The notes under the pieces were generated by a model that ran no database searches, was not told the DNA's origin, and worked only from the letters and a program-made list of their open reading frames with translations. Positions 637-43,875 of a stretch of DNA of 64,000 bases are shown piece after piece. Source of the DNA: Heteronotia binoei (taxonomy: Eukaryota); NCBI RefSeq assembly GCF_032191835.1, contig NC_083239.1:39060001-39124000 (forward strand), read 5' to 3'. Made by a program: the position numbers and the translations under genes. Position 1 is the stretch's first letter; each line of letters opens with the position of its first letter.

Positions 637-733
637 TCACGTCACTTTCATCGTGGGCTGCTTTTCCCTCAACGGAGCCTTCCTCTGGTTTGCAAAACGA
701 ATGGCCGAGAAGAAGACGAAACAAAACAAAACC
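637..733 (-). CDS. Siglec-A terminal coding exon, second half of TM and short tail (K-VLFCFVFFSAIRFANQRKAPLREKQPTMKVT*)
   Basis: ctaatgac branch-like motif, pyrimidine tract and tgtag acceptor. Completes codon AA|G=Lys. Stop TGA at 639-637. The acceptor context is shared with the paralog at 32833. Confidence 0.82.
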
Positions 734-1272
734 CTACAGAGGAGATTTCAGAGGGCAGGAAAAGGAGTCATTAGCCAAAGAGTGGGGCTCCCTGAACACA
801 GCCGGTGCATGGAAGTAGGCCATAGAGGCAACTGCCTGGCCTACAGGGCGCCACTAGGTGCCCCCTCCCCACACGCCCCTTCTGCCCACCCAAGATCCAG
901 GCGGACAAAAGAGGCGGTGTGGCCTCACTTTGAGGCTGCATCCCCTGTGAGGGAAGGCAGCCTCAGAGAAAGGCAGAGGTGCTGTATTGCCTCTTTCGTC
1001 CGCCTGGGAGCTGCAGCAACTACCTGCCTCCCCACTATTTAGCTGATCAATGGGGGGGGGGGGTTAAGTGGGAGGGGGGAGGCAGCAGAAGCAGCCGCAC
1101 CTCCTCCCCATTTAAAGACCCCCACCCATGGGGGGGCAGGGATGGGGGGGAGGAACGTGGGGAGGGGGCAGCAGCCTGGGAAAGCAACAAATCCCAGCAC
1201 CACCCCTGTCCCTGAACTGGCTCAAGAAGTTTTAACGTCAGCGGAGATCGGGACCACGGAGGCAAAAGGAAC

Positions 1273-1695
1273 TGAAGAAAACAACAAACTCACTCCGTGT
1301 ACAAAATAATTCTCTGTGTAATCCACAATATACGATTTCTTAGTCTTAAATAACAATCCAATGGCACAGAAAAAAGACCATCCAATGCACTACACGACTG
1401 CTGTCCAGAAAACAGATTGACGTTTAAACTGTAGTCCAAACGATAAAACAGAACAGGTCTATTTCGTTTCGGATATGAACTATCCTTCTTCAGGGGACCA
1501 TCTTCAAACTCTTAGGTTCGGTAGAGTTGAAGTGCCATATTTCTTTTCCTGGCTTTTCACGTTTCTATTTCATTTAATTCATTTTCTGGAATTCCAATTA
1601 CAATCCATCAGCATTTTGGCTGCTAAGAAATCACATTTTGTGGATTACACAGAGAATTATTTTGTACACGGAGTGAGTTTTGTTGTTTTTCTTCA
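1273..1695. repeat. ~70-bp inverted repeat with a decayed hammerhead-like core (Penelope-like)
   Basis: 1273-1343 is the reverse complement of 1623-1695. The minus strand at 1455-1499 reads CTGAAGA-A-GGATA(gttca)TATCC-GAAACG with no valid cleavage triplet. Confidence 0.65.
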
Positions 1696-1821
1696 AGAAG
1701 TCTGAAGGCGGATCTGGAGAACTTCTTATTGCAGCGTTCAGTTTTTTGGGATTTTTTCTCCCCAGCACGGCTATTCTGCTTTTCAGCCAAAGCACCCCCC
1801 AAGAACAGGAGAAATACTTAC

Positions 1822-1885
1822 TTGAACAAACACAGGATTATCAAGAAGAGGATTGCTGAAGACCCCCAAATGTTATTGTGGGATG
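1822..1885 (-). CDS. Siglec-A exon 6, stalk and first half of TM (SHNNIWGSSAILFLIILCLF-AA|)
   Basis: ttttctcatttcag acceptor, AA|GTAAGT donor, 64 nt (phase 1 in, phase 2 out). The paralog 33473-33536 is also 64 nt. Confidence 0.85.
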
Positions 1886-2731
1886 CTGAAATGAGAAAAC
1901 ATGGAAATCCTTCTGATTATCAGCAGCATCCAAGCCTTTCTATTGTCCCTCTTAGACAGGAGCTCCTTTGCATATTAGGCCACACACCCTTGATGTAGCC
2001 AATCCTCCAAGAGCTTACCAAAAAAAAGCCTTGTAAGCTCTTGGAAGATTGGCTGCATCAGGGGGTGTGGCCTGATATGCAAAGGCGCTCCTGCTAGAAT
2101 TCCATCCTGCTCTTAGAAAACACAATCACCCCAACCAAAACCTCAGTTCTGACACAGTACAGACAACCACAAGGTCTTTTCACCCCTATTTACCATTCAG
2201 AGCAGCATCTTCAGACAGAACAAATACTAAAAAGATATTTATACATATGAAGCTGCCTACACTGAACCAGACCCTTGGCCCATCAAGGGTCAGTACTGTC
2301 TACTCAGACTGAAAGTCTTTCCAGGGGGTCAGGCAGAGGTCTTTCCCATCACCAACTTCCTGATCCTTTAGCATCAGGGATTGAATGTGAGAACCAGTTT
2401 GATGTAGTGGTTAAGTGTGCGGACTCTTATCTGGGAGAACCGGGTTTGATTCACCTCTCCTCCACTTGCAGCTGCTGGAACGGCCTTGGGTCAGCCATAG
2501 CTCTTGCAGAGCTGTCCTTGAAAGGGCAGCTTCTGGGAGAGCTCTCTCAACCCCACCTACCTCACAGGCAGCATTCCCTCTAAGCTGAGTTAGCGTGAGC
2601 TAGCTCACAGATTTTTAGCCTCCAGCTTACCCATTTTTGTCTTTGCTCAGGAAAAATGGCCCCAGCAACACTCTATGCAGTAGCTCACAACTTTGATGGC
2701 AGTAGCTCACAAAGTAGAATTTTTGCTCACA

Positions 2732-3012
2732 AGAGCAGTTCGGTGTAGTGGTTAAGTGTGTGGACTCTTCTCTGGGAGAACTGGGTTTGATTCCCCACTC
2801 CTCCACATGCACCTGCTGGAATGGCCTTGGGTCAGCCATAGCTCTCGCAGAGCTTGTCCTTGAAAGGGCAGCTGCTGTGAGAGCCCTCTCAGCCCCACCC
2901 ACCTCACAGGGTACCTGTTGTGGGGGGAGAAGATATAGGAGATTGTGAGCCGCTCTGAGTCTCTGATCCAGAGAGAAGGGCAGGGTATAACTCTGCAATT
3001 CTTCTTCTTCTT
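2732..3012 (+). mobile_element. tRNA-derived SINE with L2-like tail and (CTT)n end (other copies: plus 2389-2570, 24568-24855; minus 15108-15385, 20157-20428, 28874-29163, 48235-48505, 49228-49462, 60153-60435, 60465-60730)
   Basis: GGTGTAGTGGTTAAG A-box, GGTTTGATTCCC B-box, shared body and TCT-repeat tail. Confidence 0.85.
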
Positions 3013-4581
3013 CACAAGACTCTGCAGCTTAGAGGAAACATTGCTCACTGGGTGTCTGTTGTGGGTGAGGGAGGTAAAGGAGATTCAGAGTGAGGGTGGG
3101 GTATAAATCCACTATCTTCTTCTTCATCTTCTTCTGCATGCCAAGTGGATGCTCCACTGCCGGGACACACAGCCCCCTCATCGCCCACAAAGCTGATGCC
3201 CCTATCTTTAAGTAAGAGCATCTTGAGAACACAGCCATTGGATAGACTCAAAACTGAAAACTCCCTTTTGGTTTTGGATGCATGTGCAGCGATGGGGGAG
3301 GGTGTTCCAAGTGACGTGTTTCTGTGTCAGGCATGAAATCTGTTTTGCGCAGAGGTGCTGCTCCGGTTGCTAACTCCAGGTTGGGAAATTCCTGGAGAGG
3401 TGGGGGATGAGCCTGGGGAGAGTGGGATTTGGGGAGGGACCTCCATGGGGCATATTGCTACCAAGTCCACCCTCCATTTTCTCCAGGGGAATCTGATCTC
3501 TGTCATCTGGAGATGAGTAGAAATTCCGAAAGATCTCAAGCCCCCCCCCCCCCCCCGGAGGTTGAAGCAACAACTGACCTGCAAGGGCTACTGTGATCAA
3601 AAATCACTATGCTGTAACTAGGGCTTTTGTAGAAAAAGCCCAGCAGGAACTCATTTGCATATTAGGCTACACCCCCTGTTGCCAAGCCAGCCGGAATGGT
3701 GTTCCTGTGTGTTCCTGCTCAAAAAAAGCCCTAGCTGTAACAATAACCATTAATTACATTTAATAGAACAGGTATGCATAGTACACAAAAATCCTTCTTC
3801 AATATCATATAAAGCAGTAGTGTCACACAATACAGTTCATATTCCAAATTCACAATAGGATAGTCTTCTTCAGGATTTTTTTTTTGCCGCAGGAACTCCT
3901 TTGCATATTAGGCCACACCCCTTGATATAGCCCATCCTTCAAGAGCTCTTTGTACAGGGCCTACTGTAAGCTCCAGGGGGACTGGCTACATCGGGGTGTG
4001 TGGCCTAATATGCAAATGAGTTCCTGCTACAAAAAAAGGCCTGGTCTTCTTAAAATCCCAGGAAAGACAAACCACAACAGGACCGTTAACTTTCACTACC
4101 TGTTTCATTCAAGAATTTCTTCAGGCATGGGATTTACTAGGACTCTGAGCAAATAACACTCTACCTGTCCTATGAAATGGAATTCATGTTTATTGTTACA
4201 GCGTAGACATTTTTGACCACAGTAGCCCTTGCAGGTTAGTTGCTGCTTCAAGTCTGTGTGATCACTCTTCTTGTATTACACACCCACCGAGAGGCTGGCC
4301 GCCCGAGCTGTTGCTGTGTCAACCTCATTATGTTGCGCTTGTGGAGAGGGGGGGGGTCCCCCTCGCTTTCAGAAATCGGTTTGTGCCAAAGCAAGAAAAC
4401 AATCACACTGATCCAAGAGAGTCCTTCCTCCAACCTTCATATGGGCAGAGGCTAGAGATGTCGCCACGGGGTGGGGAAATCCTCACCTGTTAGATTTCTG
4501 CCTGGCCTCAGGGCAAAAGGGGAGGAGGAAGAGTGGCAAACCAAAGGCAAGAACCCCCATCTAAAGGTGCACAGATCTTAC

Positions 4582-4848
4582 ATTGCACACACAACCACAG
4601 GGTCTTCGTGGCTGAGCCATAGGGGGTTTCTGCCTGGCACTGGTACTTCCCAGCATCCTCTGGTCTGAGCTCCGGCAGCAAGAGAACGCACTCCATGCCC
4701 TGCCTGGTGCAGTTGAGGGTGTCATTCCCCTTCCTCCAGCTTAGGGTGGGGACAGGTCTGCTCTCTGCCTCACAGTGCAGGCTGATGCTTTCACCCTCTT
4801 GGGCCACTGCAGCATCCAGATCCCCACTGGCTTCCCGGGAGCACGAAG
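4582..4848 (-). CDS. Siglec-A exon 5, third Ig domain (C2-set)
   Basis: tcttttcctcttgcag acceptor, T|GTAAGA donor, 267 nt, phase 1-1. EGESISLHCEAESRPVPTLSW...EDAGKYQCQA is a canonical C2-set signature. Confidence 0.92.
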
Positions 4849-6868
4849 CTGCAAGAGGAAAAGATCCGGGTTAGAGGGGAGTAGCCTATGGTTCCCATTG
4901 CTGTTGCAGCATTGCCAACTCTGGGTTGGGAAATTCTTGGTGGAGTTTGGAGTGGGGGAGGGAGGTCAGCGGGGATATGATGCCATGAGGTTTACCCTCC
5001 AGAGAAGGGTTGCCTGGTCTGCCTTGGAAAATGCGTGGAGACTTGGGGGGGTGGAGCTGGGAGAGGGCGGGGTTTGAGGAGGGGAGGGGCTTCAGCATGG
5101 TGCAGTGCCATAGCATCCACCCTTCCAAGCAGCCATTTTCTCCAGGGGAGCTGATCTCTGCCAGCTGACAATCAGTTGTAAAAGCGAGAGATCTCCAGGT
5201 CCCACCTGGAGGCTGGCAACCCTACTCCTGAGCTGCCATTTCCTGCAGAGAAGCCAGTCTCTGGAGATCTGTTGTAATTCTGGGAGAGCTTCAGGCCCAC
5301 CCGGTTCGCCATCCTACTTACACCCTTCTAACTCCACTGATTCTGACCGATTTCGGAAAACGTGGCTCTGTTTAGGATTGCATTAAGAAGACAGCAGTCA
5401 AGACAGAATTTGACGCAAAGTTTCCTCGTTCTAAGGCCTGCTTCATGCATGCAGGGGAATGAAAAGGAAAACAAAGTGGTAAAATACAGATGTGGTAGAA
5501 TGGACTGCACCATGGCAGGCTGAGGGTACAGCAGCACATTTTGGAATGCCTCCCAATATTAAAAAACCTCCCCTCCCCCCCCCCTCAAGCCAAAAAAACA
5601 GCAAGACATGCAAAGAAATGGGAGGCAGAACTTTTTTCCCACCCTTTGGTGTACTAATGTTCTCTTTGCATGGAAGTTTTCTTCTTTTAAGGAAAAGGAA
5701 TGCTGAAAGCTAGAGGCAGCCCACCAGAGCCTAAAGTGGTGCTGTCCATCCCACCACCGCCATTCTAACCTAGGGTTGCCAACCTCCCGGTGGAGACTAG
5801 AGAACTGCAACTGATCTCCAGACCACAGAGTTACATAAGGACATAAGAGAAGCCCTGTTGGATCAGGCCAATGGCCCATTCAGTCCAACACAGTGGCCAA
5901 AAAAACCAGGTGCCTTCAGGAGGTCCATTAGTACACTAGAAGCCCTTCCACTGTGGCCCCCTCCACCCTACAGAGCATCACTGCCCCAGACAGAGAGTTC
6001 CAACAATACGCTGTGGCTAATAGCCACTGATAGACCTCTGCTCCATATGTTGATCCAATCCCCTCTTGAAGCTGTCTACGCTTGTAGCCTCCACTACCTC
6101 CTGTGGCAGTGAATTCCATGTGCTAATCATCCTTTGAGTGAAGAAGTACTTCCTTTTATCCATTCTAACCCAACTGCTCCACAATTTCATCGAGTGCCCA
6201 CGAGTTCTTGTATTGTGAGAAAGGGAGAAAAGGACTTCTTTCGCTACCTACTCTATCCCATGCATAATCTTGTCAACCTCTACCATGTCACCCCTCAGTC
6301 AATGTTTCTCCAAGCTAAAGAGCCCCAATTCACTTACTTTGGAGGGCATGGCAGATTCAGAGAGTCCACTGGATGGCACTGTGTCCCACTAAGGTCCTCC
6401 CCCCTCCAAACTCCAGAAACCGCCCCCCACAAATCAGGAATTACCCAACCCTTTCTCACGCTTGGCTGTCCTCTTTCTTCTTTATTTGTGAACCAGGCCT
6501 AAGTCTTGAATTTCTGCATATGAACTTGAAATATCTCAAAACCCAAGGTTTATGTATTGGGGAGAGCGACAGCTTTTGTGGATTTGAGACTGTGTGTGCT
6601 TGGAACGGCTACTGTAGTGAAAATAAACTAGATGGTCCCTTTCCCTACGTAACACCAACATCCTTGTCCACTCTCCACTACCGGTTAATGAACTCTAATC
6701 TGACTTTCCAACTGTATGTCGAGACCTTGGGACACTTGTGTTAGCTGTCCAATGGATTCCTAGTGGTACCTTGACAAGACCTGGGAACTGTTAAGTCTCT
6801 GGCAGGGAAGGGAGAGAAAAGAGTGATTAGTAAAGATATTCCAGTGTTTTTAGACATTTTAGACTCAC

Positions 6869-6922
6869 CAAGATGCCCGTGATCTGTAGCATTTGTGGAG
6901 ATTTTGACAGTCTTGGGTGGAT
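6869..6922 (-). CDS. Siglec-A exon 4, 18-codon linker (D)PPKTVKISTNATDHGHL
   Basis: tgtttcag acceptor, G|GTGAGT donor, 54 nt, phase 1-1. The paralogous exon 34044-34097 has identical length. CD33-related Siglecs have a short linker exon here. Confidence 0.85.
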
Positions 6923-7042
6923 CTGAAACAACCAAGAGCATGGTAAGAACTTCTAAAGGGGAGCCCAAGATAAAAGGAGGAGAGAGATGGTGACAGTCTC
7001 CGGGGGAAAGAAGTCAATATAAAAGTGAAGGGAACAACTCAC

Positions 7043-7342
7043 CAGCAACATCAACATGGATGAACTTCTCAACTGTTTTCCATATATTAGGGTACTGGAC
7101 CTTGCAGGTGAGCCATTTGCCCTGATCATTGAGGGAGGGTGTGAAGGTGAAATTGGACCCATAAGTCCAACTGCCATTGCTGTGCTGTTGGCTCCACTGA
7201 GTCCTTCCGTATTTTCTCAAACGGGTATGCCATGAAAATGTGGGCTCAATCTTAATGCAGGGCCCTGGTGCCAAACAAGTATAAACAGCTTCCTTCCCAG
7301 AAAGTACCGCCGCTGAGGCCCACATCTGTGGTTTCTCTAACT
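7043..7342 (-). CDS. Siglec-A exon 3, second Ig domain (C-type)
   Basis: tttttctctgcctag acceptor, G|GTGAGT donor, 300 nt, phase 1-1. TCLAPGPC (Siglec domain-2 C-x4-C pattern), FSW, WLTCKVQYP. Confidence 0.92.
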
Positions 7343-8724
7343 CTAGGCAGAGAAAAACAAAGCAAAGCAGACTGTTTCTTTTTTATCCCTCAGTGTTCTC
7401 CTCAGTGAAGGCCCAGAGAAGCTTACAGTATTGTTCTCCTCTCCATTTTATCCTCACAACAACCCTGTGAGGTGGATTAGGCTCAGAGAATGGCTGGGTC
7501 CGGATGGCCAGTATAAGCCACCGCAGGGACTCCCCACAACTGACCCAAAAAAGCATGTCCAAACATGCACATCTGGCTCCCGTCCCACCCCCGCCCTCAC
7601 CCCATCCTTACCTGTCATTCTGCCACCTCAAAAAGATACCAATTAGTAAGTGGTAGCAAACTGGTGAGGTGTTTCAGAGGCGCTTTTCCTGGACGACTGA
7701 ATGGCCAGAAAGTGCTGGGGCAGCAGCGGAAAGTGTATGAGCTCTGTGAACACTCCTCTGGGACACCTGTGGCCCATCCCTGTTCCGGCGGTGAGCTGCA
7801 TGCCATCTGACTGCCCCAGGGTGCTTCTTTTTATGCCGGCTCACTTCTAGGATGGGATGCTGCTGCCCCAAGCTGGAGTCTGGACCCAGCCAATGTGACT
7901 GACTCAAAGTCAGCCAGAGAGCACCAAGATCACCTAAGCAAGCCTACTCAGATTTGCACTGAAGTCTATTCAATGAGGCTTATTCCCAGGAAAACAGATT
8001 GAGGTGGGGAGCCTGAAGTACCAGAACAAAATTTGAGTCCAGTGGCCCCTTTATAGCCAACAAAGTTTGATTCTGGTTATAAGCTTTTGTGTGCATGCAG
8101 ATGTTATCAGAAGAAGTGTGCATACACACCAAACCTTATATCCAGAATAAACCTTTGTTAGTCTTAAAGGTGCCACTAGACTGAAATTTTCTTTTAAGAA
8201 AAAGTGTTCTTAGGATGGCACTGCCAGTAAGTTTCCATAGCAGAGAATGGATTCGAACTGAGGTCTCCTCAATTGAAGTCTGGCACTCTAGCTATAAAAT
8301 GTCTTTCTTCTTTGCAGCCCACCTCATCGCAAGAGTGCAATTTATTTATTTTTTTGCTTAAGTTAACATATTTTTAAACGGGGTTCAAATTTTCCAAGAA
8401 AATCTCCAACACAGCTAAAAAAAAAATCACAAAAGGTAATAAAGATACAATAAATTACCATTATCAGTCAGAGCAAAGAATATCATTAAACACAATAAAA
8501 AAATTAGCTCCTTCCCAAATTGGGTTTTCAAGTCTGACTTGGGAAACTCCTGTAGATCTGGGAGCAGTTCCTGTGGATGGTAGAGTTCAGGGAGGGGAGC
8601 TCAAGCAGGGATATGATGCCATAGAGTTCACTCTCCAAAGCTGCCCTTTTGTCCAGGGAAACTGAGCATTATGGCCTGGAGATCTGTTGTTAATTCCTGG
8701 AGAACTCCAGGCCCCACCTGGAGG

Positions 8725-9372
8725 CTCAACCAACAACAAAGAACTGTGGAAAAATAACGAAAAATTAATGAAAAATACTTCAAAATTGTAATAGATAATT
8801 AAACACTTCAACTTCACACATTTTCACATATCATTACACATAACATATTATCAAAAATGCAAAGTATAAAGTACAAGGAATAAATATTCAAAAGTGCTTG
8901 CAGTTAGTCCATATCCAGTTTGAAATCCTTGAAAACTATTCATTAAAGTGCCAGTGTCCAATGTGTTGCAATTGCAGATAATTCTTGTTCTTCAGCAAAG
9001 AATTTATGATGTTAAGACGTTGCTTTAAACTTCGTTTCTTTAAAGACGTTTATTATATAGTGGAAGGTCATAAGCCTCTAACAGTAAAGCTTGTAATACT
9101 GTTTCAAATGTCTTCATCGGAGAAACCTATTCCACTTATCAACTTCCAGCCTGGCACTTTAATGAATAGTTTTCAAGGATTTCAAACTGGATATGGACTA
9201 ACTGCAAGCACTTTTGAATATTTATTCCTTGTACTTTATACTTTGCATTTTTGATAATATGTTGTTATGTGTAATGATATGTGAAAATGTGTGAAGTTTA
9301 AGTGTTTAATTATCTATTACAATTTTGAAGTATTTTTCATTATTTTTCCACAGTTCTTTGTTGTTGGTTGAG
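8725..9372. repeat. ~225-bp near-perfect inverted repeat (probable Penelope fragment) in Siglec-A intron 2
   Basis: 8725-8954 is the reverse complement of 9151-9372, with a 196-nt spacer holding a decayed ccgatgaagac..gaaac motif on the minus strand. Confidence 0.8.
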
Positions 9373-10071
9373 TCATTCTCTGTGGAACTCTAGGCTTTTC
9401 ACCCACCTGGAGGCTGGCAACTAAATACTCAATGGTGCATTGTTTTCAGAGCAACAAGGATCATGAAGCAGATGCTTTTCCAATAGGCTCCAGCACCGAA
9501 AGGAAGCATGAAGCAGTAACTAAGTAAAAGAGAAAAAATATACATGCTTGCCTAGTGCTAGGATGACAGGAGGGATCACAAGCGGGCAAAAGATACCCTG
9601 TCAATCAGTGTAATGCTGAACAGAATCACGCTCTTCTAAAAGCTACAACCTTCAGTCACTGTGATCAGGATTGCACAGTGGGGTGGGGTGGGGAGAAGGC
9701 AGCATGAAAGCAGCAATTTTCAGTGGGGAAGTAGCGGGGCAAGAAAGGGCTGAGCCCTCCTCCCCCACTGAAATAATGATGCCACAGGAAGAGGAAGCGC
9801 AAGTGCTTCACATATCCGGTTTCTCAATGTTGCTACAAAAGATACGGCTTCTCCAGCAGGGAGATGGTCATCTTCCTTCCTACTTTAGGAAATATGAAAG
9901 GCATTATTTCAAACATGACCAGGATGTGGGAGAAAAGGAGGCATGAGACTCATGAGCTTCCTTTTCCTTTACATTCTGCAAAATGCTCGCAGCTGCCAAA
10001 CTATTTTTCCTCCTCTCTGCATGGAAGAGACAGCCAAACAGTCAAGATATAGATAAGGAGGAAAGTCTTGC

Positions 10072-10482
10072 CTGTCACGTGAACTTGGACTTTTTGAGTC
10101 ACGTAGCTGTATCCCAAAGCGCTGTTCTTAATTCGAAAGTAGTACTCCCCTGCGTCCTCTGAGCGGGCATCCAGGATGCTGAAGGAGCAATTGCCTTCTT
10201 CCGGCTCGCCTGTTAAGCTGAAACGGGTCTTCACAGAGAACCAGGTCTCCTTCTCGTCATTTGTGGCCACAAGAATACCTTTAGCCCAGCCATAGGAGCG
10301 GTGGGCAAAATAGTGCCCCTCTCCATCTTTGTATTGTAACCAATAACCATAGAGTTTCTCAGGGTTGGTCCTGTCTGTCTGATCATAAGTGAAGCTGCAG
10401 GGAATGTGAACACAGAGGCCACGTTGCACGGAGACAGAGGCGGGAACCGTCAGGTTATAGGCTGCATTCTGGCTCCACAGAC
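10072..10482 (-). CDS. Siglec-A exon 2, V-set sialic-acid-binding Ig domain
   Basis: Pyrimidine tract+AG at 10484-10483, 411 nt, phase 1-1. Motifs VSVQRGLCVHIPCSF, YGYW, RFSLTGEPEEGNCSFSI and DAGEYYFR (essential Arg), ending VHVT. Donor is AG|GCAAGA (GC-AG intron). Confidence 0.93.
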
Positions 10483-12121: not shown

Positions 12122-12203
12122 CTTTGAGCAAGGAGGCAAAGATCAGGATTGTCAGAGTTGCTGAGGAAGAGGACAGATTCTGCGCCTTCCAGAAGGGATT
12201 CAT
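12122..12203 (-). CDS. Siglec-A (CD33-related Siglec-like) coding exon 1, signal peptide MNPFWKAQNLSSSSATLTILIFASLLK(G)
   Basis: ATG at 12203. 82 nt ending in phase 1 at G|GTAGAA. Hydrophobic core. Same length as and clearly paralogous to 43794-43875. Joins in frame to the V-set exon. Confidence 0.85.
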
Positions 12204-30952: not shown

Positions 30953-30956
<4 letters not shown>

Positions 30957-32747: not shown

Positions 32748-32832
32748 TCATCTACTATTCCCCTCTCGTCGGAATCTCCCTCGAGCGAAAAAGACAAAGC
32801 ACGCGATAAAGAACAGGATGCCCGTCAAAACC
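32748..32832 (-). CDS. Siglec-B terminal coding exon (K-VLTGILFFIACFVFFARGRFRREGNSR*)
   Basis: ctaatgactctttttctcttgaaatctgcttcatag acceptor. Completes AA|G=Lys. Stop TGA at 32750-32748. AATAAA at 32669-32664. Confidence 0.85.
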
Positions 32833-33445: not shown

Positions 33446-33472
33446 AACAGGATAGAAGGGGGAAATACTCAC

Positions 33473-33536
33473 TTCAACAGGTACTGCATTATCACGAAGA
33501 TGGTCACCGTAGTCCCAAGAAACTGAGTCCGGGGTG
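33473..33536 (-). CDS. Siglec-B exon 5, stalk and first half of TM (PRTQFLGTTVTIFVIMQYLL-AA|)
   Basis: tttcctcatttcag acceptor, AA|GTGAGT donor, 64 nt. Confidence 0.85.
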
Positions 33537-34043: not shown

Positions 34044-34097
34044 CAAGCTGTCTGTCCCTTGTTACATTCAGCGGTGTCTTGTCAAAATCAGGCGAAC
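34044..34097 (-). CDS. Siglec-B exon 4, linker (G)SPDFDKTPLNVTRDRQL
   Basis: atttgtgtttcag acceptor, G|GTGAGA donor, 54 nt, phase 1-1. Same size as the Siglec-A linker, with the N-x-T sequon at the same position. Confidence 0.82.
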
Positions 34098-34900: not shown

Positions 34901-35545
34901 AATCAGAGCTTACTTCCTCAGATACACAAAGTCTACGTTCATCGGTGGTAGTGAAAACGGCCATCAAGTTACAGCTGACTGAGAACCCCATAGGATTTTC
35001 AAGGCAAGAGATGTTCAGAGGTAATTTGCCATTTTGTGCTTTGGTGTCACACCCCTGGTATTCCTAGGAGGTCTAGCCGAGGTCAACCCTGCTTAGCTTA
35101 CGAGATCTGACAAGATCAGGCTAGCCTGGGCCATCTAGGCCGAGTTCCACAGCCACCAGGCAGGTAACATTTATATGGAAGAAAAGGGTGGGATTCTAGT
35201 AGGAGCTCCTTTGCATATTAGGCCACACATCCAGGCCTTGAATTCAGCAGGAGCTCACAGGAGTGCAGCTCCTGAACCTTTCCGAGGGTTCCCCTACCTC
35301 CTCCCCACCTACCCACCTTGTCCATTGAATAGTAAGTAGGTGCAGCTGCATAACAATCCCTGGATGAGTTCCACCACGTATTTTTCTACAAAACGACCCC
35401 TGATGTAGCCAATTCTCCAAGATCTTACAAGGCTTTTTTTGTAAGCTCTTGGAGGATTGGCTACATTGGGGGGGTGGCGACCTAATATTCAAAAGAGGTC
35501 CTGCTAGAATTCCAAAGGCAATATAAAACGAAGGAAGCTACCCAC

Positions 35546-35848
35546 CAGTAAGCTCGAGAAAGATGGTGCTCTGAATTCGTTTCTTTACATTTGGGTACCA
35601 GACCCAGCAGGTGAGCCATTTGCCCCGGTCAATTGTGGAGGGTGTGAAGGTGAAGTTAGAGCCATAGATCCAGGTACCGTTGCTTTGCTGCTGTCTCCAC
35701 TGAACTGTTCTATAGTCTACCAGAATAGTGGTCCACGAAATTTTTGCATTAATCCTCAAGCAGGGCCCTCGTGCCAAACAGGTATAAACAGCTTTCGTCC
35801 CAGAAACTACAGGAGAGTAATTCCGAATCTGTGGTTTTTCTGTCAATT
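35546..35848 (-). CDS. Siglec-B exon 3, second Ig domain
   Basis: ctttgctcag acceptor, G|GTGGGT donor, 303 nt. TCLARGPC, ISW, GSNFTFTPS, WLTCWVWYP. Clearly paralogous to 7043-7342. Confidence 0.92.
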
Positions 35849-38800
35849 CTGAGCAAAGGGGGGGGGGGGGAATACCAGACCAGAATTAAAGGAAAATTCA
35901 TTGAGGACTGACTAAGAGCAGGTATTATGAATGGTATCCTGTATCTTTTCTATTTTAGTTTCAGCTCCACTTTTCTCCTCAACGCAGACCCAACATGAAG
36001 TACAACAGCGGTCTTTTCTTTTCCACTATCTACAGAACAACCACCTTGTTAAGGTAGGTTAGGTTCAGACAGGGCTTTTTTCTTTTTTTTTGGAGCAGGA
36101 ACTCCTTTGCATATTAGGCCACAGACCCCTGATGTAGCCAATCCTCCAAAAGCTTACAGGGCCTTCTGTAAGCTCTTGGAGGATTGGCTACATCAGGAGT
36201 ATGTGGCCTAATTTGCAAAAAAGTTCCTTTGACAAAAAGCCCCCTGAGTTCAGAGAATGTAAGCCAAGTCAAAGTAAGCCAAGACCAAGGTCTACTCTGA
36301 TTCCTACTGAAGTCTATTCCATGGGGCTTAATCCCAAGGAAAAGCATTTTTTTGGATGGCACTGCCAGTGACCTTCCATGGCAGTTTCAAACCTGGTTTC
36401 CTTAGACTGTAGTCTGGCGCTCTAACCATTAGACATCTTTTGCCCTTTGCTGTCACCATGAACCCCAATGCAAGGTTGCTATTATTATTATTATTAACCT
36501 AAAAAGGTAAAGGTAGTCCCCTGTGCAAGCACCATTCATTTCTGACTCTGGGATGACGTCGCATCATGACGTTTTCACGGCAGACTTTTTACGAGGTGGT
36601 TTGCCATTGCCTTCCCCAGTCATCTACGTTCCCCCCCACCCCCCCAGCGAGCTGGGTACTCATTTTACCGATCTCAGAAGGATGGAAGGCTGAGTCAACC
36701 TTGAACCGGCTACCTGAACCCAGCTTCCACCAGGGATCGAACTCAAGTCATGAGCAGAGCTCGGGCTGCAGTACTGCAGCTTTACCACTCTGTGCCACGG
36801 GGCTGCTGATTATTAACCTACCTCTTTCCAATAAAATCTTCCAAGTCAGCTAACAATCACAAAATGATATATCTCCTCATTATAAACCAGAGCAGCAGAA
36901 CACAACAAACAATAAAACCACAATAAAGCTCCAGCTGAAAAATATGTTTGTCTATTGGCTTGTTCTTAAAGCAGCATTTTATTGGGGAGCCATGCTGGAT
37001 CAGATCAAGGGCTCACCTATTCCGGCATGCTGTTCACACAGTAGCCAACTAGCTGAAGAAGTTCAGTCTGGAGATCACCTGTGATTCCAGGAGATCTCTA
37101 GGCCCCCACTGGAGGCGAGCAACCTTCGTCTTGGTACCATTTAAGGAGTGGATGGTTGGTGCCCCTGCTAACCCTTCCTACAAACTGAGTGAATTTCCAC
37201 GAAAATCAGTTTAGTTCGTGGGAGATGCGATTGCACAAACTGTGGCTCATGAACTGGGCCCAGTTTGTGCCCATGCCCATCATGGCTAGTAGCCACTGTA
37301 ATTAGTTGCCCCTGATAGCACACCTCTGTCCACACACCTTTTAAAGCCCTCCAAGCTGGCAGCAGCCACCACATCCTGTGGCAGAGAGTTTCATAATTTA
37401 ACTACGTTCTGCACGGGAAGAAAAGTTGCACAAAAGGAACACATTTTTAGGGGGCAAAGAAAGTGCTTGTTGTGGACGATACTGGTCTGGCCCCTGTACC
37501 AAGACAAAAAGATACTAGAAATATATACACCCAGGCTGCGATCACACACGCTAAATAATGCACTTTCAATCCACTTCCAATGCACTTTTCAACTGGATTT
37601 TGCCAGTTTACACAGTAAAATGCAGTTGGAAAGTGCATCAAAAGTGGATTGGAAGTGCATTATTTAGTGGGGGTGATTGCAGCCGAAGCCAAAATATTTT
37701 AAAAAACACAGATTCCCAATGAAACCAGAGACTATGCTATTGGCAATCTTGCCAGACAAGAAGAACTTCACGAGACTTAGATCCAAGTAGTCAGTCGTGT
37801 TGGTCTGAAGTAGTAGAACAAAATAGGAGTCAAGTTGCACCTTTAAGACCAACTTAGTTTTATTCAGAATGTAAGCTTTCGTGTGCTCTCTAAGCACACT
37901 TCATCCGACAAGGTGGTTTGCCATTGCCTTCCCCAGTCATCTACACTTCCCCCCCCAGCAAGCTGGGGACTCATTTTACCGACCTCGGAAGGGTGGAAGG
38001 CTGAGTCAACCTGGAGCCGGCTACCTGAAAACACCTTGGTTAAAACCCTTATAAAAGTTATACTTATTACACATTGAGATACCGTTTGAAATATCTTCAT
38101 TATACTTATATAAAAGTTATAGTTATTACACACTGAGATACTGTTGTTTGTAATATCTTCATTATACAGTGCCAGTTAGTCATGGTTATATCTTCTCAGG
38201 GCTTTTTTTGAGCAGGAACGGCCAGGAGCGCAGTTCTGGCTGGCTTGGCATCAGGGGGTGTGGCCTAATATGCCAATGAGTTCCTGCTGGGCTTTTTCTA
38301 CCAAAAAAAAAGCCCTGTATCTTCTGAATCATCTTTATCTACCATCTCTCCTCTGTGTTATACTTATTTCTGGCCATGATGAGGTGAGCCCCCCCTCCCC
38401 CACTCAAATGATGATGCAACAGGAAGTGCAAGTGTTCTGCTTATGTGGTTTCTCGAAGCCTCCGGAAAAGATGCAAGTCCTCCAGTAGGGAGGTGGATAG
38501 CTTTGCTCCTACATTTAAAAAGTAAAAGGTAATCCCCTGCGCAAGCACCAGTTGTTTCTGACTCTGGGGTGACGTCGCATAACGACGTTTTCACGGCAGA
38601 CTTTTTACGGGGTGCTTTGCCATTGCCTTCTCCAGTCAGCTACACTTTCCCCCCGCAGCAAGCTGGGTACTCATTTTGCTGACCTCGGAGGGGTGGAAGG
38701 CTGAGTCAACCTTGAGCTGGCTACCTGAACCCAGCTTCCGGCAGGATCAAACTCAGGTTGCGAGCAGAGCTTAGGACTGCAGTACCGCAGCTTTACCACT

Positions 38801-38971
38801 CTGTGCCACAGGGCTGCTCCTACATTAGGAGACGTGAAAGGTGTATTTCAAACCTGACCAGGATGCTGAAGAACAGAAAGCATGAGGTGCTTGAGCTTCC
38901 AGCTCCACCAGCCTAACCGTTCCATCTCCTCAGCGTACATTCAGGAAAGAAATAAGGTGGGAAAGCCTTGC

Positions 38972-39385
38972 CTGTCACGACAACTTTAAGCGGCATACGA
39001 GCTGTGCCCTTGTAGTCGTGCACCATCCCCTTGGTCTCAATGCGAAAGTAGTACTCTCCTGCGTCCTGGAGTTCAACGGTAAGGATGCTGAAGGAGCAAT
39101 CGCCTGCTGTCACGTCGCCCGTTAATCGGAAACGGTTCCTCACAGAGTTGTGCAACACCATCTTGTTGTCACTGGAGGCCACGAGAATGCCTTCGACTCT
39201 TTGGAATCTGTAGCTGGTGACCAGATAATGCCAATATCTGCCTCTTTTCTCAAACCAATAGCCATGGAGTTTCTCGGAGCTGTTCCGGCTTGAAGCGAAG
39301 CTGCAGGGAATGTGGACACAGAGGCCACGCTGGACAGAGATGGAGGCGGGAACCATCAGTTTATCTTCCTTCTGGCTGAGCAAAC
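38972..39385 (-). CDS. Siglec-B exon 2, V-set sialic-acid-binding Ig domain
   Basis: Same acceptor context as Siglec-A (gtcttctttctctggaag). 414 nt, phase 1-1. ISVQRGLCVHIPCSF, RFRLTGDVTAGDCSFSI, DAGEYYFR. Donor AG|GCAAGG (GC-AG). Confidence 0.93.
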
Positions 39386-39460
39386 CTTCCAGAGAAAGAA
39401 GACAGGAGTTAGCTGGCGTATGGACAGAGGGATCGTGAAGCTCTGTTTTGCCTTGGCCCT

Positions 39461-40186
39461 CCTGAAAGGTTAATATGCAATTAAAGGGCCAAACATTAAA
39501 AACAAACTGTAAAACGAATCATAAAACGACATACATGTATTTATTGTAGAAAGCTAAAACTATTTAAGGGCCCATCATAAGCCTCTCTCCTATGTTCAAA
39601 CATAAAGCCAAAATGGGAACCCACTCAACTTGACCTGATGCGTTTCGACCTAGACTGGTCTTCTTCAGGTCAGATAGAACAATGCTGGACCACAAAGAAA
39701 TTTAATGAAGTGACAAAGGCTTAAAGATATTCTTGACACATAACTCTTGGCACATAAGCTCTGACCTTACACCTACCTTGGACCTTGTGGCATACAATAA
39801 GACACCAGATGCAATATGTATGCCCTTGATTAGGACATAAGGCTGTAGAATAACAGGCCTCAAGAATACCTTTAAGCCTTTGTCCCCTCGTTACATTTCT
39901 TTGCGGTCCAGCATTGTTCTATTTTTTTTATTGTATTCTGTATTATGAGCCAATATGTGTACTTACCCTTCTGACCTCTGAAGAAGACCAGTCTAGGTGG
40001 AAACGCGTCAGGTCAAGTTGAGTGGATTCCCACTGTGGTTTCATGACTGCACATAGGATAGAGGCTTACGATGGGCCCTTAAATGGTTTTTAGCTTTCTA
40101 CAATAAATACACGTATGTTGGTTTATGATTTATTTTACAGTTCGTTTTTAATGTTTGGCCCTTTAATTGCATATTAACCTTTCAGG
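39461..40186. mobile_element. Penelope-derived inverted-repeat insertion in Siglec-B intron 1
   Basis: Arms ~39461-39735 and ~39858-40186 are reverse complements, each carrying an HHR copy. Absent from the paralogous Siglec-A intron (~10550-10570). Confidence 0.75.
39972..40015 (+). ncRNA. Hammerhead ribozyme motif, right arm of a Penelope inverted repeat
   Basis: TGACCT-CTGAAGA-A-GACC(agtcta)GGTG-GAAA-CGCG-TC-AGGTCA: 6-bp stem I, ACGCGT palindrome, GUC site. The basal pair of stem II is mutated (G-G). A mirror copy lies at 39631-39672 on the minus strand. Confidence 0.7.
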
Positions 40187-43100
40187 TTTCTTACTCCAGT
40201 TTTTGGGTTAAGTTTCTTTCCCTTCTTCGTTTTTCCTCCTACAGTCCTAGCCAGCCCTTCCAGGATCTTTCTGTACAACGGAAGGAAGGCTCCCAGACGT
40301 CCCCAGAACTCCCAGCTTGATGGGGATGCTGCTGCGTATCCGGCCAGGGAGGCAGACGCCAAACTCTCCATCTGGAAGCAGCATTTTGAGTAGTCCAGCA
40401 GTAAAAAGGGGGAGCTGGGGTGGATGGTCTACCAAAAGAGTAGCCAAACTTACTTAATGTAAGAGCCACGCAGAATACACATCAGATGATTGAGAGCCGC
40501 AAGACATTAATGCCAGATGTTTGAGAGCTGCAAGGCAACAACAGAGGGAGGGAAGGAGGAAAGCAAATAGATGGGGAAACAAGGAGGAAGAGAGAAGTGG
40601 AAAGAAAGCAACTTTAACTTTAAATGCATTCTCCAAGCTACCAACTGGCTTGGCTTGGAGAAGCGACTGAAAGAGAGAAATGCCTTCTCCAAGCTGGCCG
40701 ACAGGATGGTGGGGGCTTGGAGAGCCACACAATATGTATGAAAGAGCCATGTGTGGCTCCCGAGCTGCAGTTTGGCCACCTCTGGTCTAGCACCTTGCAG
40801 AACAAGCTCTCCGCCATTTCTCCATGACTGCAGGTAGGAAAATGTACTTTATAGCCACTACATGAGAAGCCTGTAGGGTTGCCAACCTCCAGGTAAGGCC
40901 TGGAGACCTCTTGGAATTAATACTGATCTCCAGAGATTTTTTCCCACTGGATAAAATGGCTGCTTTGATGCATGGACTCTATGGTAGGTTGCCAAAACCA
41001 AATTAGGAAATTCATATATATTTGGGGGCAGTCAAGCTTGGGGGAACAACCTCAGCAGAGCGTGATGCTACAGAGTGTACTAAGAGGGGCAAGAACTGGG
41101 AAAATGGTGGTTCGTTTTGGTTCATGGTTCGTTTTGATTTCACAAATCAAATGAACCATGAAATAACCGAACCACCATTTTCCCTGAACCAATTTGTGGA
41201 TTGTTAGTTATGGCTGGGAGAGGGAGGGGAAGCCACTCCTCCTGTCTCCAGCCCATTAACTCTCCATTGGATCCTACAGGCCCATAGGATACCATGGAGA
41301 GATTGTGCAGTGCCTGCAGCACCGCTCTAGACAAAAGGGGTTTAAACTAGAGAGAATGGGTTTAAAGGGCCCATAAGGCACAATGCAGCAATCTCTCCCC
41401 AAATTTCTGGGATTTGGCAATGCAATTTTTAAAATAAAAAAAGATCACAGCAGAAACTAAAAATATAAACTAAAATATAAAACGCTCTGAGCAGAAGGCA
41501 AATGGGAGCTGGGTTGCCCCTATGGTAACCAACTTCCACACTGGGCCTGGCGATCTCTCAAAATTACATCCCTAGAGTTAGCCCTTCGAAACAGTCATTT
41601 TCTCCGGGGAACTGATGTCTGTTGCTAAATCCCAGTATCCTCCCACCTTTCCATTTTAAACAAAATATCACAAAGGCTCCTGTATTCTAGTTTTCCAGGT
41701 CTCCTCATCCCTATTCACCTCTATGGAGCTCAAATGCAATTAAAAACAAACAAATGTATCTGACTTTCTTGCTTGCAAAAGTAAAACTTTCCCTCTTCTA
41801 TAACCTGGCAGCAGTGCCAGCTTGCCCACTAGGCAAACTAGAGGGTTGCCTAGGGTGCCGGCAGGGCGAGGGCACCTACTTTGGCTTTTCCCCTCCTCCC
41901 CCCTAGGCAAACGGCTAGTTTGCCCATTTCCCAGCCTCCTTCTCCCTGCCTTCTTCACCCCAGGTCTATTTCAATGCCCGGAACGGCGATCGAGCACCAT
42001 GCTCCTGGGTATCTAAAGGTGCTCCCCCCGCCCCCCGGGCCGATCGGCTGATCAGCAGGTAAAGCTGCATGGTGCACTATCTGTCAGGCAGATAGTAGCA
42101 GCAGGAAGGACCAGCATCCTGAAAGGGCGCCTCAGCTGCTGCCTCCTCCCCAGGGGGGGGGGGAGGCACAGGGGGCACTGTGGAGGTGGGCGGCGGGCTG
42201 TGAGTCTGCCTAGGGCACCATGCGCCCTTGGGTTGGTGCTGCCTGGCAGAAATGATTCTCTACAAGAACGTGACTGACCCAAGGTCATACCAGCAGGTGC
42301 AGGCGAAGGAGCAGGGAATCAAACCCAGTTCTCCCAGATTAGAGTCCGTGCACTCTATTACAGGCTTTAAAATCCAAATATTACAAGTTAAAAACCTATC
42401 ACTGACATTTGATACACTTGAATCCTGTTCTTTCATTCAGAAGATTGCAACAGATTCCCTGGGGCTCCCATATGGGTCTTTTATCAGGATGAGGGCTGCT
42501 TCACCGGAGATTTGAGAACAGGGACCTCAGTGGGGTACAATGCCATAGAATCCACCCTCCAAGGCATCCATTTTCTCCAGGGAAACTGATCCCTGTAGTC
42601 TGGAGAGGGGCTGGGGTATCCCCAGGTCCCACTCGGAGGCTGGCATGCTGTGAGACAAAGAACCCCTGATTCCTCCCTGAGGTTAATGCAAATAGTAATG
42701 GAATTATTCCATCTTGCAGGTTTTGTTTATTGGGCCTCTCTGCCTACATGGCCCTTATCTTCAAGGCCAAAGTTAGGAATGTGATCGTTGCTCTTCATGA
42801 GAACCTGCGGCCCGCAGGATGGAAGGGGGGAATCAGGAATGATGGGATAACTTTCTAGAGGGTTCCAGGAAGACTGTGTCCTGATTGGATTGTCATCATC
42901 ACCTGATGCAGGTTGGCCAAAAGACTCTAACTGGGCTAAGAGCCTGGAGGGGAAAAACTAGCTTGAGTTCTAATGGACTAAAGGCCTGGACTATGATATG
43001 CTTATATTGCAACGGACAGCAACATAGAGGATACTTAAGCTATGGCTTTTGACTTTGGGACTTTAATATTGTGCCAACTAATGCAGGTTTTAGATGTGTT

Positions 43101-43793
43101 AGACGGTTAAGCTAGTTTTTCTTGTTTTCTTTTACTGTATCATTTTAGAGTGGTATGTTGTGTAGAAACAAAACTATTTCTGAAAATGACTCAAATGAAC
43201 TTCACGGATTTTTACAGGAATAGTTTTCTTGTGAGTGCTAGCTCTGGGAAGCCACAGGGTTCAGGCTTGGACTCTTTGACGCAGGTTTACCAACAAGACA
43301 GGGTCCAAAGCCTTCTCTGATGTTACCCTCTTTTGCTGGATTGTAGAAGGTCTGCTGTCTCTATGGGGGACCTCCTTTTAAAGCTATCTATGTCTGTTGC
43401 CACTACCACCTCTGAAATTCTACCATTTAATTACTCATGGAATGAAGAAGAGCTTCTTTTTTGTCTATTCTGAATTTACCACCCATTTACTACATCTGGT
43501 GCCGCTGAGTTCTTGCAATACACCATATGTAATTTTAGAAACCTCTATCACGTCCCTCACCACCACAGATGGAATTCTAGCTGGAGCACCTTTGCATATT
43601 AGGCCACACCCCCTTGATGTAGCCAATCCTCCAAGAGCTTACAAAACAGGGACTTGGAGGACTGACTACATCAGGGTAGTGTGGCCTAATATGCAAAGGA
43701 GCTCCTGCTAGAATTCCACCCCTGCTCACCACTACTTGTTTTTATATAAATGTTTGTTCCCAGAATTTTCTCATCTCTACACATCACGCCTAC

Positions 43794-43875
43794 CTTTGAC
43801 AAGAGAGACAAAGATCAGGACTGTTAGAGTTGCTGAGGAAGAGGCTGGATTCTGCGGCTTCCGGGGGGGACCCAT
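43794..43875 (-). CDS. Siglec-B coding exon 1, signal peptide MGPPRKPQNPASSSATLTVLIFVSLVK(G)
   Basis: ATG at 43875. 82 nt, G|GTAGGC donor. Paralogous to 12122-12203. Confidence 0.85.

What the first reader, a model, noticed from the sequence alone, without database searches (positions are those of the whole stretch)
637..43875. Two complete activating-type (TM-lysine, ITIM-less) CD33-related Siglec genes in a reptile
Seen: both genes assemble into open frames (424 aa and 333 aa) with consensus splice phases. They keep the F-strand Arg (YYFR) and the Siglec cysteine pattern. The TM has a lysine (A: AILFLIILCLF-K-VLFCFVFFSAI; B: TVTIFVIMQYLL-K-VLTGILFFIACFVFFA), and the tails are short with no tyrosine. 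Established: mammalian Siglec-14, -15 and -16 use a TM basic residue to recruit DAP12, and activating CD33-related Siglecs are usually paired with ITIM-bearing inhibitory twins. Inference: a squamate activating-Siglec module, probably evolved independently, whose inhibitory partner may lie beyond the left edge of the window. The two tiny TM exons are easily missed by annotation.
Basis: partly seen in the sequence, partly recalled or inferred. Interest (0 to 1): 0.82.

Follow-up and report, generated by a model that had tools for sequence, protein, structure and literature searches.

The report
Gecko activating Siglec genes, one paired
Two intact sialic-acid-receptor (Siglec) genes of a gecko carry a membrane-buried lysine and no inhibitory tail, and one has a near-identical inhibitory twin next door, so the activating/inhibitory "paired receptor" design known from primate Siglecs also exists in lizards.

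Summary
Both genes lie on the minus strand and assemble into 424 aa (gene A, 637-12203) and 333 aa (gene B, 32748-43875).

- **Already annotated:** the two products are letter-for-letter identical to NCBI-predicted proteins of Heteronotia binoei, tiny TM exons included. The claim that annotation misses those exons fails here.
- **Expression:** RNA contigs from three runs of one study join gene A's last Ig exon, TM exon 1, TM exon 2 and 3'UTR.
- **Classification:** the ectodomains match CD33-related Siglecs (Siglec-5, -8, CD33). Siglec-15 and CD22 match only weakly.
- **Inhibitory twin:** the predicted partner exists about 29 kb beyond the left edge, on the same strand. It is a 623-aa ITIM-bearing gene, 85% identical to gene A over the first 370 residues. 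The shared DNA block is 5.9 kb, includes introns, and is 91-97% identical.
- **Age of the cassette:** the TM-lysine cassette, with the Lys codon split by a phase-2 intron, is found in geckos, lacertids, skinks, an anguid and an agamid.
- **Concerted evolution:** ectodomains cluster by species rather than by TM type.

DAP12 coupling is inferred, not shown. The scan had already noted the split Lys codon on this window (s1-345521). I class this as a new member of a known kind.

The parts
12122..12203 (-). Gene A exon 1: start codon and signal peptide (82 nt)
   Evidence: Model built. The product is identical to NCBI P0012.
10072..10482 (-). Gene A exon 2: V-set domain with YYFR arginine; GC donor
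   Evidence: Pfam V-set 1e-10 and Ig_CD22. The Arg aligns to the Siglec-8 chain. 95.6% nucleotide identity to the twin's exon.
7043..7342 (-). Gene A exon 3: first C2-set domain
   Evidence: Pfam C2-set_2. Model.
6869..6922 (-). Gene A exon 4: 54-nt linker exon
   Evidence: The twin has a linker exon of the same size and phase.
4582..4848 (-). Gene A exon 5: second C2/I-set domain; the homology block with the inhibitory twin ends 6 nt past its donor
   Evidence: Pfam I-set 7e-14. Homology block from blastn. An RNA contig joins this exon to exon 6.
1822..1885 (-). Gene A exon 6: outer half of the TM helix, ending with AA of the Lys codon
   Evidence: RNA contigs of X1, X2 and X3 span 1821-1885 joined to 732.
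637..733 (-). Gene A exon 7 (coding part): G of the Lys codon, inner half of the TM, 20-aa tail, stop
   Evidence: The same split codon occurs in Tiliqua and Lacerta genes.
150..636 (-). Gene A 3'UTR (approximate end), with ATTAAA at 170-165
   Evidence: RNA contigs run from 732 down to 153-170. The signal was found.
43794..43875 (-). Gene B exon 1: signal peptide
   Evidence: Exact reconstruction of P0006.
38972..39385 (-). Gene B exon 2: V-set domain with YYFR; GC donor
   Evidence: Pfam V-set 1e-8. Model.
35546..35848 (-). Gene B exon 3: C2-set domain
34044..34097 (-). Gene B exon 4: 54-nt linker/stalk exon
33473..33536 (-). Gene B exon 5: outer half of the TM, ending with AA of the Lys codon
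   Evidence: The flanking introns are homologous to those of gene A.
32748..32832 (-). Gene B exon 6: G of the Lys codon, inner half of the TM, short tail, stop

Best explanation
The window comes from the gecko Heteronotia binoei and holds two tandem genes on the same strand. Both are intact members of a lineage-specific, CD33-related-type Siglec expansion.

Each gene encodes a sialic-acid-binding V-set domain that keeps the essential Arg. Gene B adds one C2 domain and gene A adds two. Both have a TM helix with a central lysine and a short tail without signalling motifs.

Most likely mechanism (inferred): the buried Lys pairs with the TM aspartate of an ITAM adaptor, DAP12/TYROBP by analogy with Siglec-14, -15, -16 and -H. 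Ligand binding would then activate myeloid or lymphoid cells rather than inhibit them.

Shown here:
- Gene A is the activating half of a paired receptor. Its neighbour downstream, about 29 kb away, has almost the same V-set, C2 and C2 ectodomain, then an extra Ig domain, an uncharged TM and an ITIM/ITSM-like tail.
- The two genes share a 5.9-kb block, introns included. It stops at the donor of the last shared Ig exon.
- The ectodomains of K-type and ITIM-type genes cluster by species across squamates. This is the signature of repeated gene conversion or re-duplication.
- The TM-Lys cassette itself is old and occurs across squamates.

Gene B is an unpaired activating member with two Ig domains.
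For: Shown:
- The gene models are exact matches to NCBI proteins.
- An RNA contig joins C2-2, TM1, TM2 and the 3'UTR. Two further runs confirm the TM1-TM2 junction.
- Pfam finds V-set, Ig_CD22, C2 and I-set domains.
- The Arg and cysteines align with Siglec-8.
- PDB ranking puts CD33-type Siglecs far above MAG, and MAG far above CD22 and Siglec-15.
- In the tree, a clade of mammalian Siglec-5 and -10 plus turtle, amphibian and squamate genes excludes MAG and CD22 with support 97/95.
- The twin P0109 is 85% identical over 370 aa with no gaps. It has an uncharged TM and LIYSNI, LYYATV and VEYTEV motifs. It lies on the same chromosome and strand, about 29 kb downstream.
- The shared block is 91-97% identical, introns included.
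- The Lys is invariant in 13 K-type sequences from 10 squamate genera.
- The split Lys codon is also present in a skink and a lacertid.
- The ectodomain tree needs at least 8 switches between K and ITIM types. A single clade of all K-type ectodomains is rejected, p-AU 3e-50.

Inferred from established knowledge: a mid-membrane Lys plus a short tail recruits DAP12 in Siglec-14, -15 and -16 (reviewed in PMC6288428).
Against: - No gecko DAP12/TYROBP sequence was available, so no binding test was possible.
- RNA support comes from assembled contigs of one study on a close relative (about 2.5% divergent in the UTR). It covers gene A's last three exons only. Gene B has no RNA evidence here.
- The RNA contig's C2-2 part differs from the reference at 28 of 226 nt. 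It may be an allele, a conversion variant or an assembly chimera with a paralog.
- Sialic acid binding is untested.
- The K-clade group for the AU test was named after the tree had been seen.
Confidence: 0.72

Rival explanations
1. The genes are activating receptors, but the buried Lys recruits a different adaptor (an FcR-gamma-like or DAP10-like chain) rather than DAP12.
For: The sequence shows only a central basic residue. Adaptor choice cannot be read from that alone, and no adaptor gene was examined.
Against: From established knowledge, Lys-bearing immunoreceptors, including Siglec-15, -16 and -H, use DAP12. Arg more often goes with FcR-gamma. The Lys is invariant across squamates.
Confidence: 0.15
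2. They are non-signalling decoys or ligand sinks. The short-tailed proteins compete with the inhibitory twin for ligands or pathogens without activating cells.
For: The tail has no motif. The ectodomain is nearly identical to the inhibitory twin.
Against: A charged Lys kept invariant in the middle of a TM helix in 10 squamate genera is hard to explain without a TM partner. A decoy would more simply be secreted or carry a neutral TM.
Confidence: 0.08
3. The TM-Lys forms are minor isoforms or prediction artefacts, and the main products of these loci carry ITIM tails.
For: Paroedura entries with this cassette are labelled as isoforms X2. Some database models fuse the cassette into longer proteins (P0110, P0141).
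Against: Neither the window nor the 10 kb downstream of gene A contains ITIM, TM or further Ig exons. RNA contigs show the TM-Lys splicing followed by a 3'UTR with a poly(A) signal. The cassette is conserved with its split codon in three squamate infraorders.
Confidence: 0.03
4. They are orthologs of the conserved activating Siglec-15. Gene B in particular shares its V + C2 + TM-Lys layout.
For: Gene B has the same domain count and also a TM Lys.
Against: The Siglec-15 chain 7zoz matches gene B at only E 2e-4, against 3e-21 for Siglec-8. It is not among the 60 rows shown for gene A. Gene B is nested in a gecko clade with 100/100 support, together with ITIM-bearing genes.
Confidence: 0.01

Closest known systems
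Human Siglec-5 / Siglec-14 paired receptors
   Same: An inhibitory ITIM gene and an adjacent activating gene share near-identical N-terminal Ig domains, kept alike by gene conversion. The activating member has a basic TM residue and a short tail. The solved Siglec-5 chain is the best PDB sequence match of gene A's V+C2 region.
   Different: Siglec-14 uses Arg (from memory), while here the residue is Lys. The shared tract here covers three Ig domains at 86-96% exon identity, not near-100% over two (the mammalian figure is from memory). The genes are not orthologs, because they fall in a squamate-specific clade. The Lys codon is split between two exons.
Primate Siglec-11 / Siglec-16 (gene conversion; PMC5701461)
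   Same: The activating partner carries a TM Lys and evolved from, and is repeatedly converted with, its inhibitory neighbour.
   Different: This is a different lineage with a different TM cassette, and the cassette is far older (shared across squamates). Siglec-16 is often a pseudogene in humans, whereas here the reading frames are intact.
Siglec-15
   Same: It is an activating Siglec with a TM Lys and DAP12 coupling. It has a V + C2 layout like gene B.
   Different: Siglec-15 is a conserved single-copy gene that predates tetrapods (PMC7226832). Its sequence match here is weak (E 2e-4). It is not a member of this clade.
NCBI names of these loci ('Siglec-12', 'Siglec-8', 'Siglec-14' of H. binoei)
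   Same: The protein sequences are the same as those reconstructed here.
   Different: The names imply orthology to human genes, and the tree does not support that. The protein named 'Siglec-14' is the inhibitory twin. The two activating genes carry names of human Siglecs that are not activating (from memory).

Membership tests
Siglec (I-type sialic-acid lectins) | N-terminal V-set domain with the essential F-strand arginine | tested here: met
   Pfam finds V-set and Ig_CD22. The YYFR Arg aligns with the ffRle Arg of the Siglec-8 chain 7quh. It is present in A, B and the twin.
Siglec (I-type sialic-acid lectins) | Siglec cysteine pattern (extra Cys in the V-set B strand, partner Cys in the first C2 domain, intrasheet B-E disulfide) | tested here: met
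   GLCVHIPCSF, GNCSFSI and YTCLAPGPC align column for column with Siglec-8. The evidence is from sequence only; no structure was built.
Siglec (I-type sialic-acid lectins) | Arg-dependent binding of sialylated glycans | not testable with these tools
   This needs a glycan array with an R-to-A control.
CD33-related Siglec subgroup | Closer to CD33, Siglec-5, -7, -8 and -10 than to sialoadhesin, CD22, MAG or Siglec-15 | tested here: met
   PDB E-values for gene A: Siglec-5 7e-29, CD33 2e-25, MAG 2e-13, sialoadhesin 8e-3. For gene B: Siglec-8 3e-21, CD22 9e-5, Siglec-15 2e-4. The tree clade has support 97/95. No Siglec-15 sequence was included in the tree.
CD33-related Siglec subgroup | One-to-one orthology with the human Siglec named in the database entry (Siglec-12, Siglec-8) | tested here: not met
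   The squamate genes form their own clade (100/97). The sampled mammalian CD33-type Siglecs (Siglec-5, -10, -G) form a separate clade.
DAP12-coupled activating immunoreceptors | Lys or Arg near the middle of the TM helix | tested here: met
   Gene A reads AILFLIILCLF-K-VLFCFVFFSAI and gene B reads TVTIFVIMQYLL-K-VLTGILFFIACFVFFA. The Lys is invariant in 13 squamate sequences.
DAP12-coupled activating immunoreceptors | Short cytoplasmic tail without ITIM, ITSM or tyrosine | tested here: met
   The tails have no Tyr and no motif.
DAP12-coupled activating immunoreceptors | Physical, Lys-dependent association with DAP12/TYROBP | not testable with these tools
Paired activating/inhibitory receptors | A neighbouring inhibitory gene with a near-identical ligand-binding domain | tested here: met
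   Gene A against P0109: 85% amino-acid identity over 370 residues and 95.6% nucleotide identity in the V-set exon. P0109 is about 29 kb downstream on the same strand. For gene B no twin was found in the two profile searches that returned named H. binoei proteins.

The most novel reading that the evidence does not exclude
The squamate TM-lysine cassette arose inside the family, independently of the mammalian activating Siglecs, by burying an existing juxtamembrane lysine.

The evidence is as follows:
- In inhibitory squamate Siglec genes, the TM exon ends in phase 2 inside the stop-transfer K/R codon. In H. binoei this is AA|G (LGLI-K-FYKQRK), and in Lerista it is AG|G.
- A mammalian Siglec-10 gene has a phase-2 intron at about the same spot.
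- The activating cassette keeps the same intron, phase and split Lys codon.
- Its next exon, however, begins with about 11 extra T-rich codons (GTT TTG TTT TGT TTC..., giving VLFCF...). These codons form the inner half of the helix, ahead of a recognisable ...F.NQRK remnant and an early stop.

On this reading, one small insertion plus a truncation turned an inhibitory receptor into a DAP12-type one roughly 200 million years ago. Gene conversion has since kept the ectodomains of the pairs alike.
Probability: 0.35. Interest if true: 0.6.

Novelty: new member of a known kind. Interest (0 to 1): 0.5.

Why it matters
Paired activating and inhibitory Siglecs are thought to arise when pathogens exploit inhibitory Siglecs by mimicking sialic acid, and the host answers with an activating copy. 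So far the evidence comes from primates.

A squamate-wide TM-lysine cassette that is independently built, combined with species-wise homogenised ectodomains in several lizard lineages (and an Arg-type pair in Xenopus), would show that this counter-measure is a recurrent solution in tetrapods.

It also offers a non-mammalian system for testing the idea. The reading frames are intact, there is some expression evidence, and a concrete inhibitory partner is known.

On a practical level, the database names (Siglec-8, -12, -14) are misleading for these loci.

Tried and rejected
- **Other Siglec exons nearby.** I ran tblastn with all 177 fetched proteins against the window. Against the 10 kb beyond gene A's 3' end I used the first 105 proteins. 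Neither search found ITIM, Ig4 or TM exons.
- **The cassette in other receptor families.** An exhaustive HMMER search of gene A residues 366-424 against 1.8 billion representatives returned only one hit, a Paroedura Siglec of the same type. There is therefore no sign of exon shuffling from another family. The query is short, so a negative result is weak.
- **DNA-level homology of the cassette to the twin's TM exons.** Local alignments were short and largely explained by splice-site consensus. The origin hypothesis rests on intron phase and codon position only.
- **Loci for other K-type and ITIM-type proteins.** P0001, P0019 and P0125 are not on record as gene products. One look-up failed because the service was busy and succeeded on retry.
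- **Literature.** Five word combinations on Siglecs in reptiles, squamates or lizards found no paper describing these genes. The library lacks most subscription journals.
- **Gecko DAP12.** Notes of this scan hold nothing on TYROBP. No complex prediction was attempted for lack of a partner sequence.
- **Selection.** dN/dS between gene A and the twin is about 0.5-0.8 on few substitutions. This is too little to claim selection.
Full report
**Observation**

Using consensus splice sites, gene A assembles from seven exons: 12203-12122, 10482-10072, 7342-7043, 6922-6869, 4848-4582, 1885-1822 and 733-637. The frame is open for 424 aa. Gene B assembles from six exons: 43875-43794, 39385-38972, 35848-35546, 34097-34044, 33536-33473 and 32832-32748. 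It gives 333 aa.

The Ig exons are phase 1. This holds in both genes and also in the twin described below.

Pfam recognises V-set and Ig_CD22 in the second exons and C2-set or I-set in the following ones. The window has no N runs.

**Identity of the genome and prior annotation**

A protein search with the V-set frame returned gecko Siglecs. [quoted passage not shown] The 424-aa protein called 'Siglec-12 [Heteronotia binoei]' (P0012) is letter-for-letter gene A.

The window is CM063341.1, about 39,060,001-39,124,000, of assembly GCA_032191835.1. Both models, tiny TM exons included, are therefore already in NCBI's automatic annotation. On the other hand, two independent reconstructions agree exactly.

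**Expression**

RNA-library contigs from three runs of one study were laid on window 1-6000. The two organism labels are about 97.5% identical to the window in the 3'UTR, so they are a close relative or another lineage.

- One 924-nt contig covers 170-732, then 1821-1885, then 4585-4810. This corresponds to 3'UTR plus TM exon 2, TM exon 1 and the last Ig exon of gene A.
- Contigs of the other two runs bridge 732|1821 as well.
- The 1-nt offsets are the usual alignment ambiguity at a G.
- An ATTAAA lies at 170-165 on the minus strand, just upstream of where the contigs end.

The contig's Ig part differs from the reference at 28 of 226 nt. When translated it is a mosaic of gene-A and twin residues, with the frame intact. 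It could be an allele, a conversion variant or an assembly chimera. Gene B was not tested with reads, because only one reads call was allowed.

**What kind of Siglec**

Gene A's V-set plus first C2 was searched against all PDB sequences, with these matches:

| PDB match | E-value |
|---|---|
| Siglec-5 | 7e-29 |
| CD33 | 2e-25 |
| Siglec-10 | 1e-24 |
| Siglec-8 | 3e-24 |
| Siglec-7 | 1e-21 |
| MAG | 2e-13 |
| sialoadhesin | 8e-3 |

CD22 and Siglec-15 are not among the 60 rows shown. For gene B, Siglec-8 scores 3e-21, CD22 9e-5 and Siglec-15 (7zoz) 2e-4.

In the alignment to the Siglec-8 chain, the YYFR arginine sits on the essential arginine and the Siglec-specific cysteines align.

I built a maximum-likelihood tree of the V-set+C2 region of 55 proteins.
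- It puts mammalian Siglec-5, -10 and -G together with turtle, amphibian and squamate genes in a clade that excludes MAG and CD22 (support 97/95).
- The squamate genes form their own clade (100/97).

They are therefore CD33-related-type genes of a lineage-specific expansion. They are not orthologs of the human Siglecs whose names they carry. No Siglec-15 sequence could be included in the tree.

**Activating features**

In both products the lysine lies in the middle of a hydrophobic stretch of about 24-30 residues. The tails have no tyrosine and no ITIM or ITSM.

The same cassette follows the consensus ...LCL(I/F/N)-K-VLFCF.FF.S...N(Q/R)RKAPL. It occurs in predicted Siglecs of these genera:

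| Group | Genera |
|---|---|
| Geckos | Paroedura, Gekko, Eublepharis |
| Lacertids | Podarcis, Lacerta |
| Skink | Tiliqua |
| Anguid | Elgaria |
| Agamid | Pogona |

The lysine is invariant in 13 sequences from 10 genera, counting Heteronotia.

In the Tiliqua and Lacerta genes the helix is again split inside the Lys codon, AA|A and AA|G respectively. The cassette with its odd exon structure therefore predates the divergence of these groups.

That a buried Lys with a short tail recruits DAP12 is established for Siglec-14, -15 and -16 (review PMC6288428). For the gecko proteins it is an inference. I could not obtain a gecko TYROBP sequence, so I ran no complex prediction.

**The inhibitory partner**

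A second profile search that allowed longer proteins found 'Siglec-14 [Heteronotia binoei]' (P0109, 623 aa) on the same chromosome.
- It is 85% identical to gene A over the first 370 residues without a single gap.
- It then continues with a further Ig domain, an uncharged TM (AGLCGALVAVILCVLCLGLI) and a tail with LIYSNI, LYYATV and VEYTEV.
- Its gene lies at 39,006,822-39,031,348 on the same strand. Its start is about 28.7 kb left of the window's first base and about 29.3 kb downstream of gene A's stop.

At the DNA level the two genes share one collinear block: window 10508 to 4576 against L002 16558 to 23494. Identity is 96.6% at the V-set end and falls to about 91%, introns included. The block starts 26 nt before the V-set acceptor and stops 6 nt after the donor of the last shared Ig exon.

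Exon identities are:

| Exon | Nucleotide identity |
|---|---|
| V-set | 95.6% |
| C2-1 | 96.0% |
| linker | 98.1% |
| C2-2 | 85.8% |

The signal-peptide exons are far more diverged (57% amino-acid identity).

This is the anatomy of a paired receptor, as in Siglec-5/-14 and Siglec-11/-16 (PMC4042635 and PMC5701461, listed).

For gene B no inhibitory twin appeared in either search. Its nearest relative is a K-type Paroedura protein, 57% identical.

**Concerted evolution**

In the ectodomain tree the K-type and ITIM-type proteins pair by species, in Heteronotia (100/100), Gekko kuhli (100/99), Paroedura (100/99) and Podarcis. In Tiliqua the K-type protein pairs (100/99) with a second Tiliqua model whose TM type I could not assign.
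- At least 8 changes of TM type are needed on the tree.
- A tree that holds all K-type ectodomains together is rejected (lnL difference 987, p-AU 3e-50). The caveat is that I named this group after seeing the tree.
- The K cassettes are plainly homologous to each other.

The ectodomain and the membrane/tail module therefore have different histories. The simplest reading is repeated gene conversion, or re-duplication, between neighbouring activating and inhibitory genes.

**Origin of the cassette (hypothesis)**

The twin's TM exon (85 nt) also enters in phase 1 and ends in phase 2 inside a Lys codon. That is the stop-transfer Lys of LGLI-K-FYKQRK. An inhibitory Lerista gene splits an Arg codon (AG|G) at the same place. 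A tenrec Siglec-10 gene has a phase-2 intron there as well.

The activating cassette has the same intron, phase and split codon. Its next exon, however, starts with about 11 T-rich hydrophobic codons before an ...F.NQRK remnant and an early stop. This suggests that the buried Lys is the old juxtamembrane Lys.

DNA-level similarity is too weak to prove this. A search of 1.8 billion representative proteins found the cassette only in another gecko Siglec. I give this reading about one chance in three.

**Alternatives**

- A different adaptor cannot be excluded.
- A decoy role fits the missing tail but not the invariant buried charge.
- A minor-isoform or artefact reading is contradicted by three points: the RNA contigs, the absence of other exons in the window and 10 kb downstream, and conservation of the cassette.
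- Siglec-15 orthology is contradicted.

**Novelty**

The proteins are in RefSeq under misleading names. Five literature searches found no paper on CD33-type or activating Siglecs of reptiles. A fish study states that fish genomes lack CD33-related Siglecs (PMC7226832). The library misses most subscription journals.

The principle is well known from primates: an activating Siglec with a TM Lys, paired with and converted against an inhibitory neighbour. I therefore class this as a new member of a known kind. It carries a credible case for convergent origin and for an old squamate-wide cassette.

The scan had already noted the split Lys codon on this same window (s1-345521). I checked it and it holds.

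Noticed in passing
window 18448-19986 (+): An intronless TRIM-type gene (RING, B-box, PRY, SPRY; 512 aa as called) lies between the two Siglec genes on the opposite strand.
   Followed up: partly
window 10070-10071 and 38970-38971 (minus strand); L002:16995-16996: The intron after the V-set exon uses a GC donor (AG|GCAAG) in gene A, in gene B and in the inhibitory twin. This is a conserved non-canonical splice site.
   Followed up: partly
L002:26794-27392: The inhibitory twin's gene contains a further Ig-like exon that NCBI's 623-aa model does not use. It matches a segment that the Gekko kuhli protein P0013 contains. It may be an alternative exon or a decaying one.
   Followed up: no
window 4582-4848 compared with L002:23222-23488: The last shared Ig exon is more diverged between gene A and its twin (85.8%) than the 930-nt aligned block that contains it, which is mostly intron (about 91%). 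An RNA contig from a related animal carries a mosaic of both versions.
   Followed up: partly
proteins P0166 and P0148 (Xenopus tropicalis): A frog Siglec with an arginine in its TM and a 26-aa tail without tyrosine is the sister (100/100) of an ITIM-bearing frog Siglec. This suggests paired Siglecs with a different charged cassette in amphibians.
   Followed up: partly
proteins P0110 (Eublepharis, 908 aa) and P0141 (Pogona, 673 aa): In these database models the TM-lysine cassette sits in the middle of the protein and is followed by further Ig domains. They are probably read-through fusions of two neighbouring genes.
   Followed up: no
L002:41326-44527: Another Ig-domain gene (401-aa product, weak V-set and I-set hits) follows the inhibitory twin. 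None of the 177 Siglec proteins matched it at E 1e-3.
   Followed up: no
window 1800-4200 and 5000-6000: Interspersed repeats in gene A's introns are represented at very high depth in the RNA-library contigs. They account for most of the 'share of words' that picked these runs.
   Followed up: no
L003:1327-2361 and L004:1-399: In the skink and the lacertid, the K-type Siglec gene has a 7TM receptor gene about 8-10 kb upstream. In the gecko, gene A's upstream neighbour is the TRIM gene instead.
   Followed up: no
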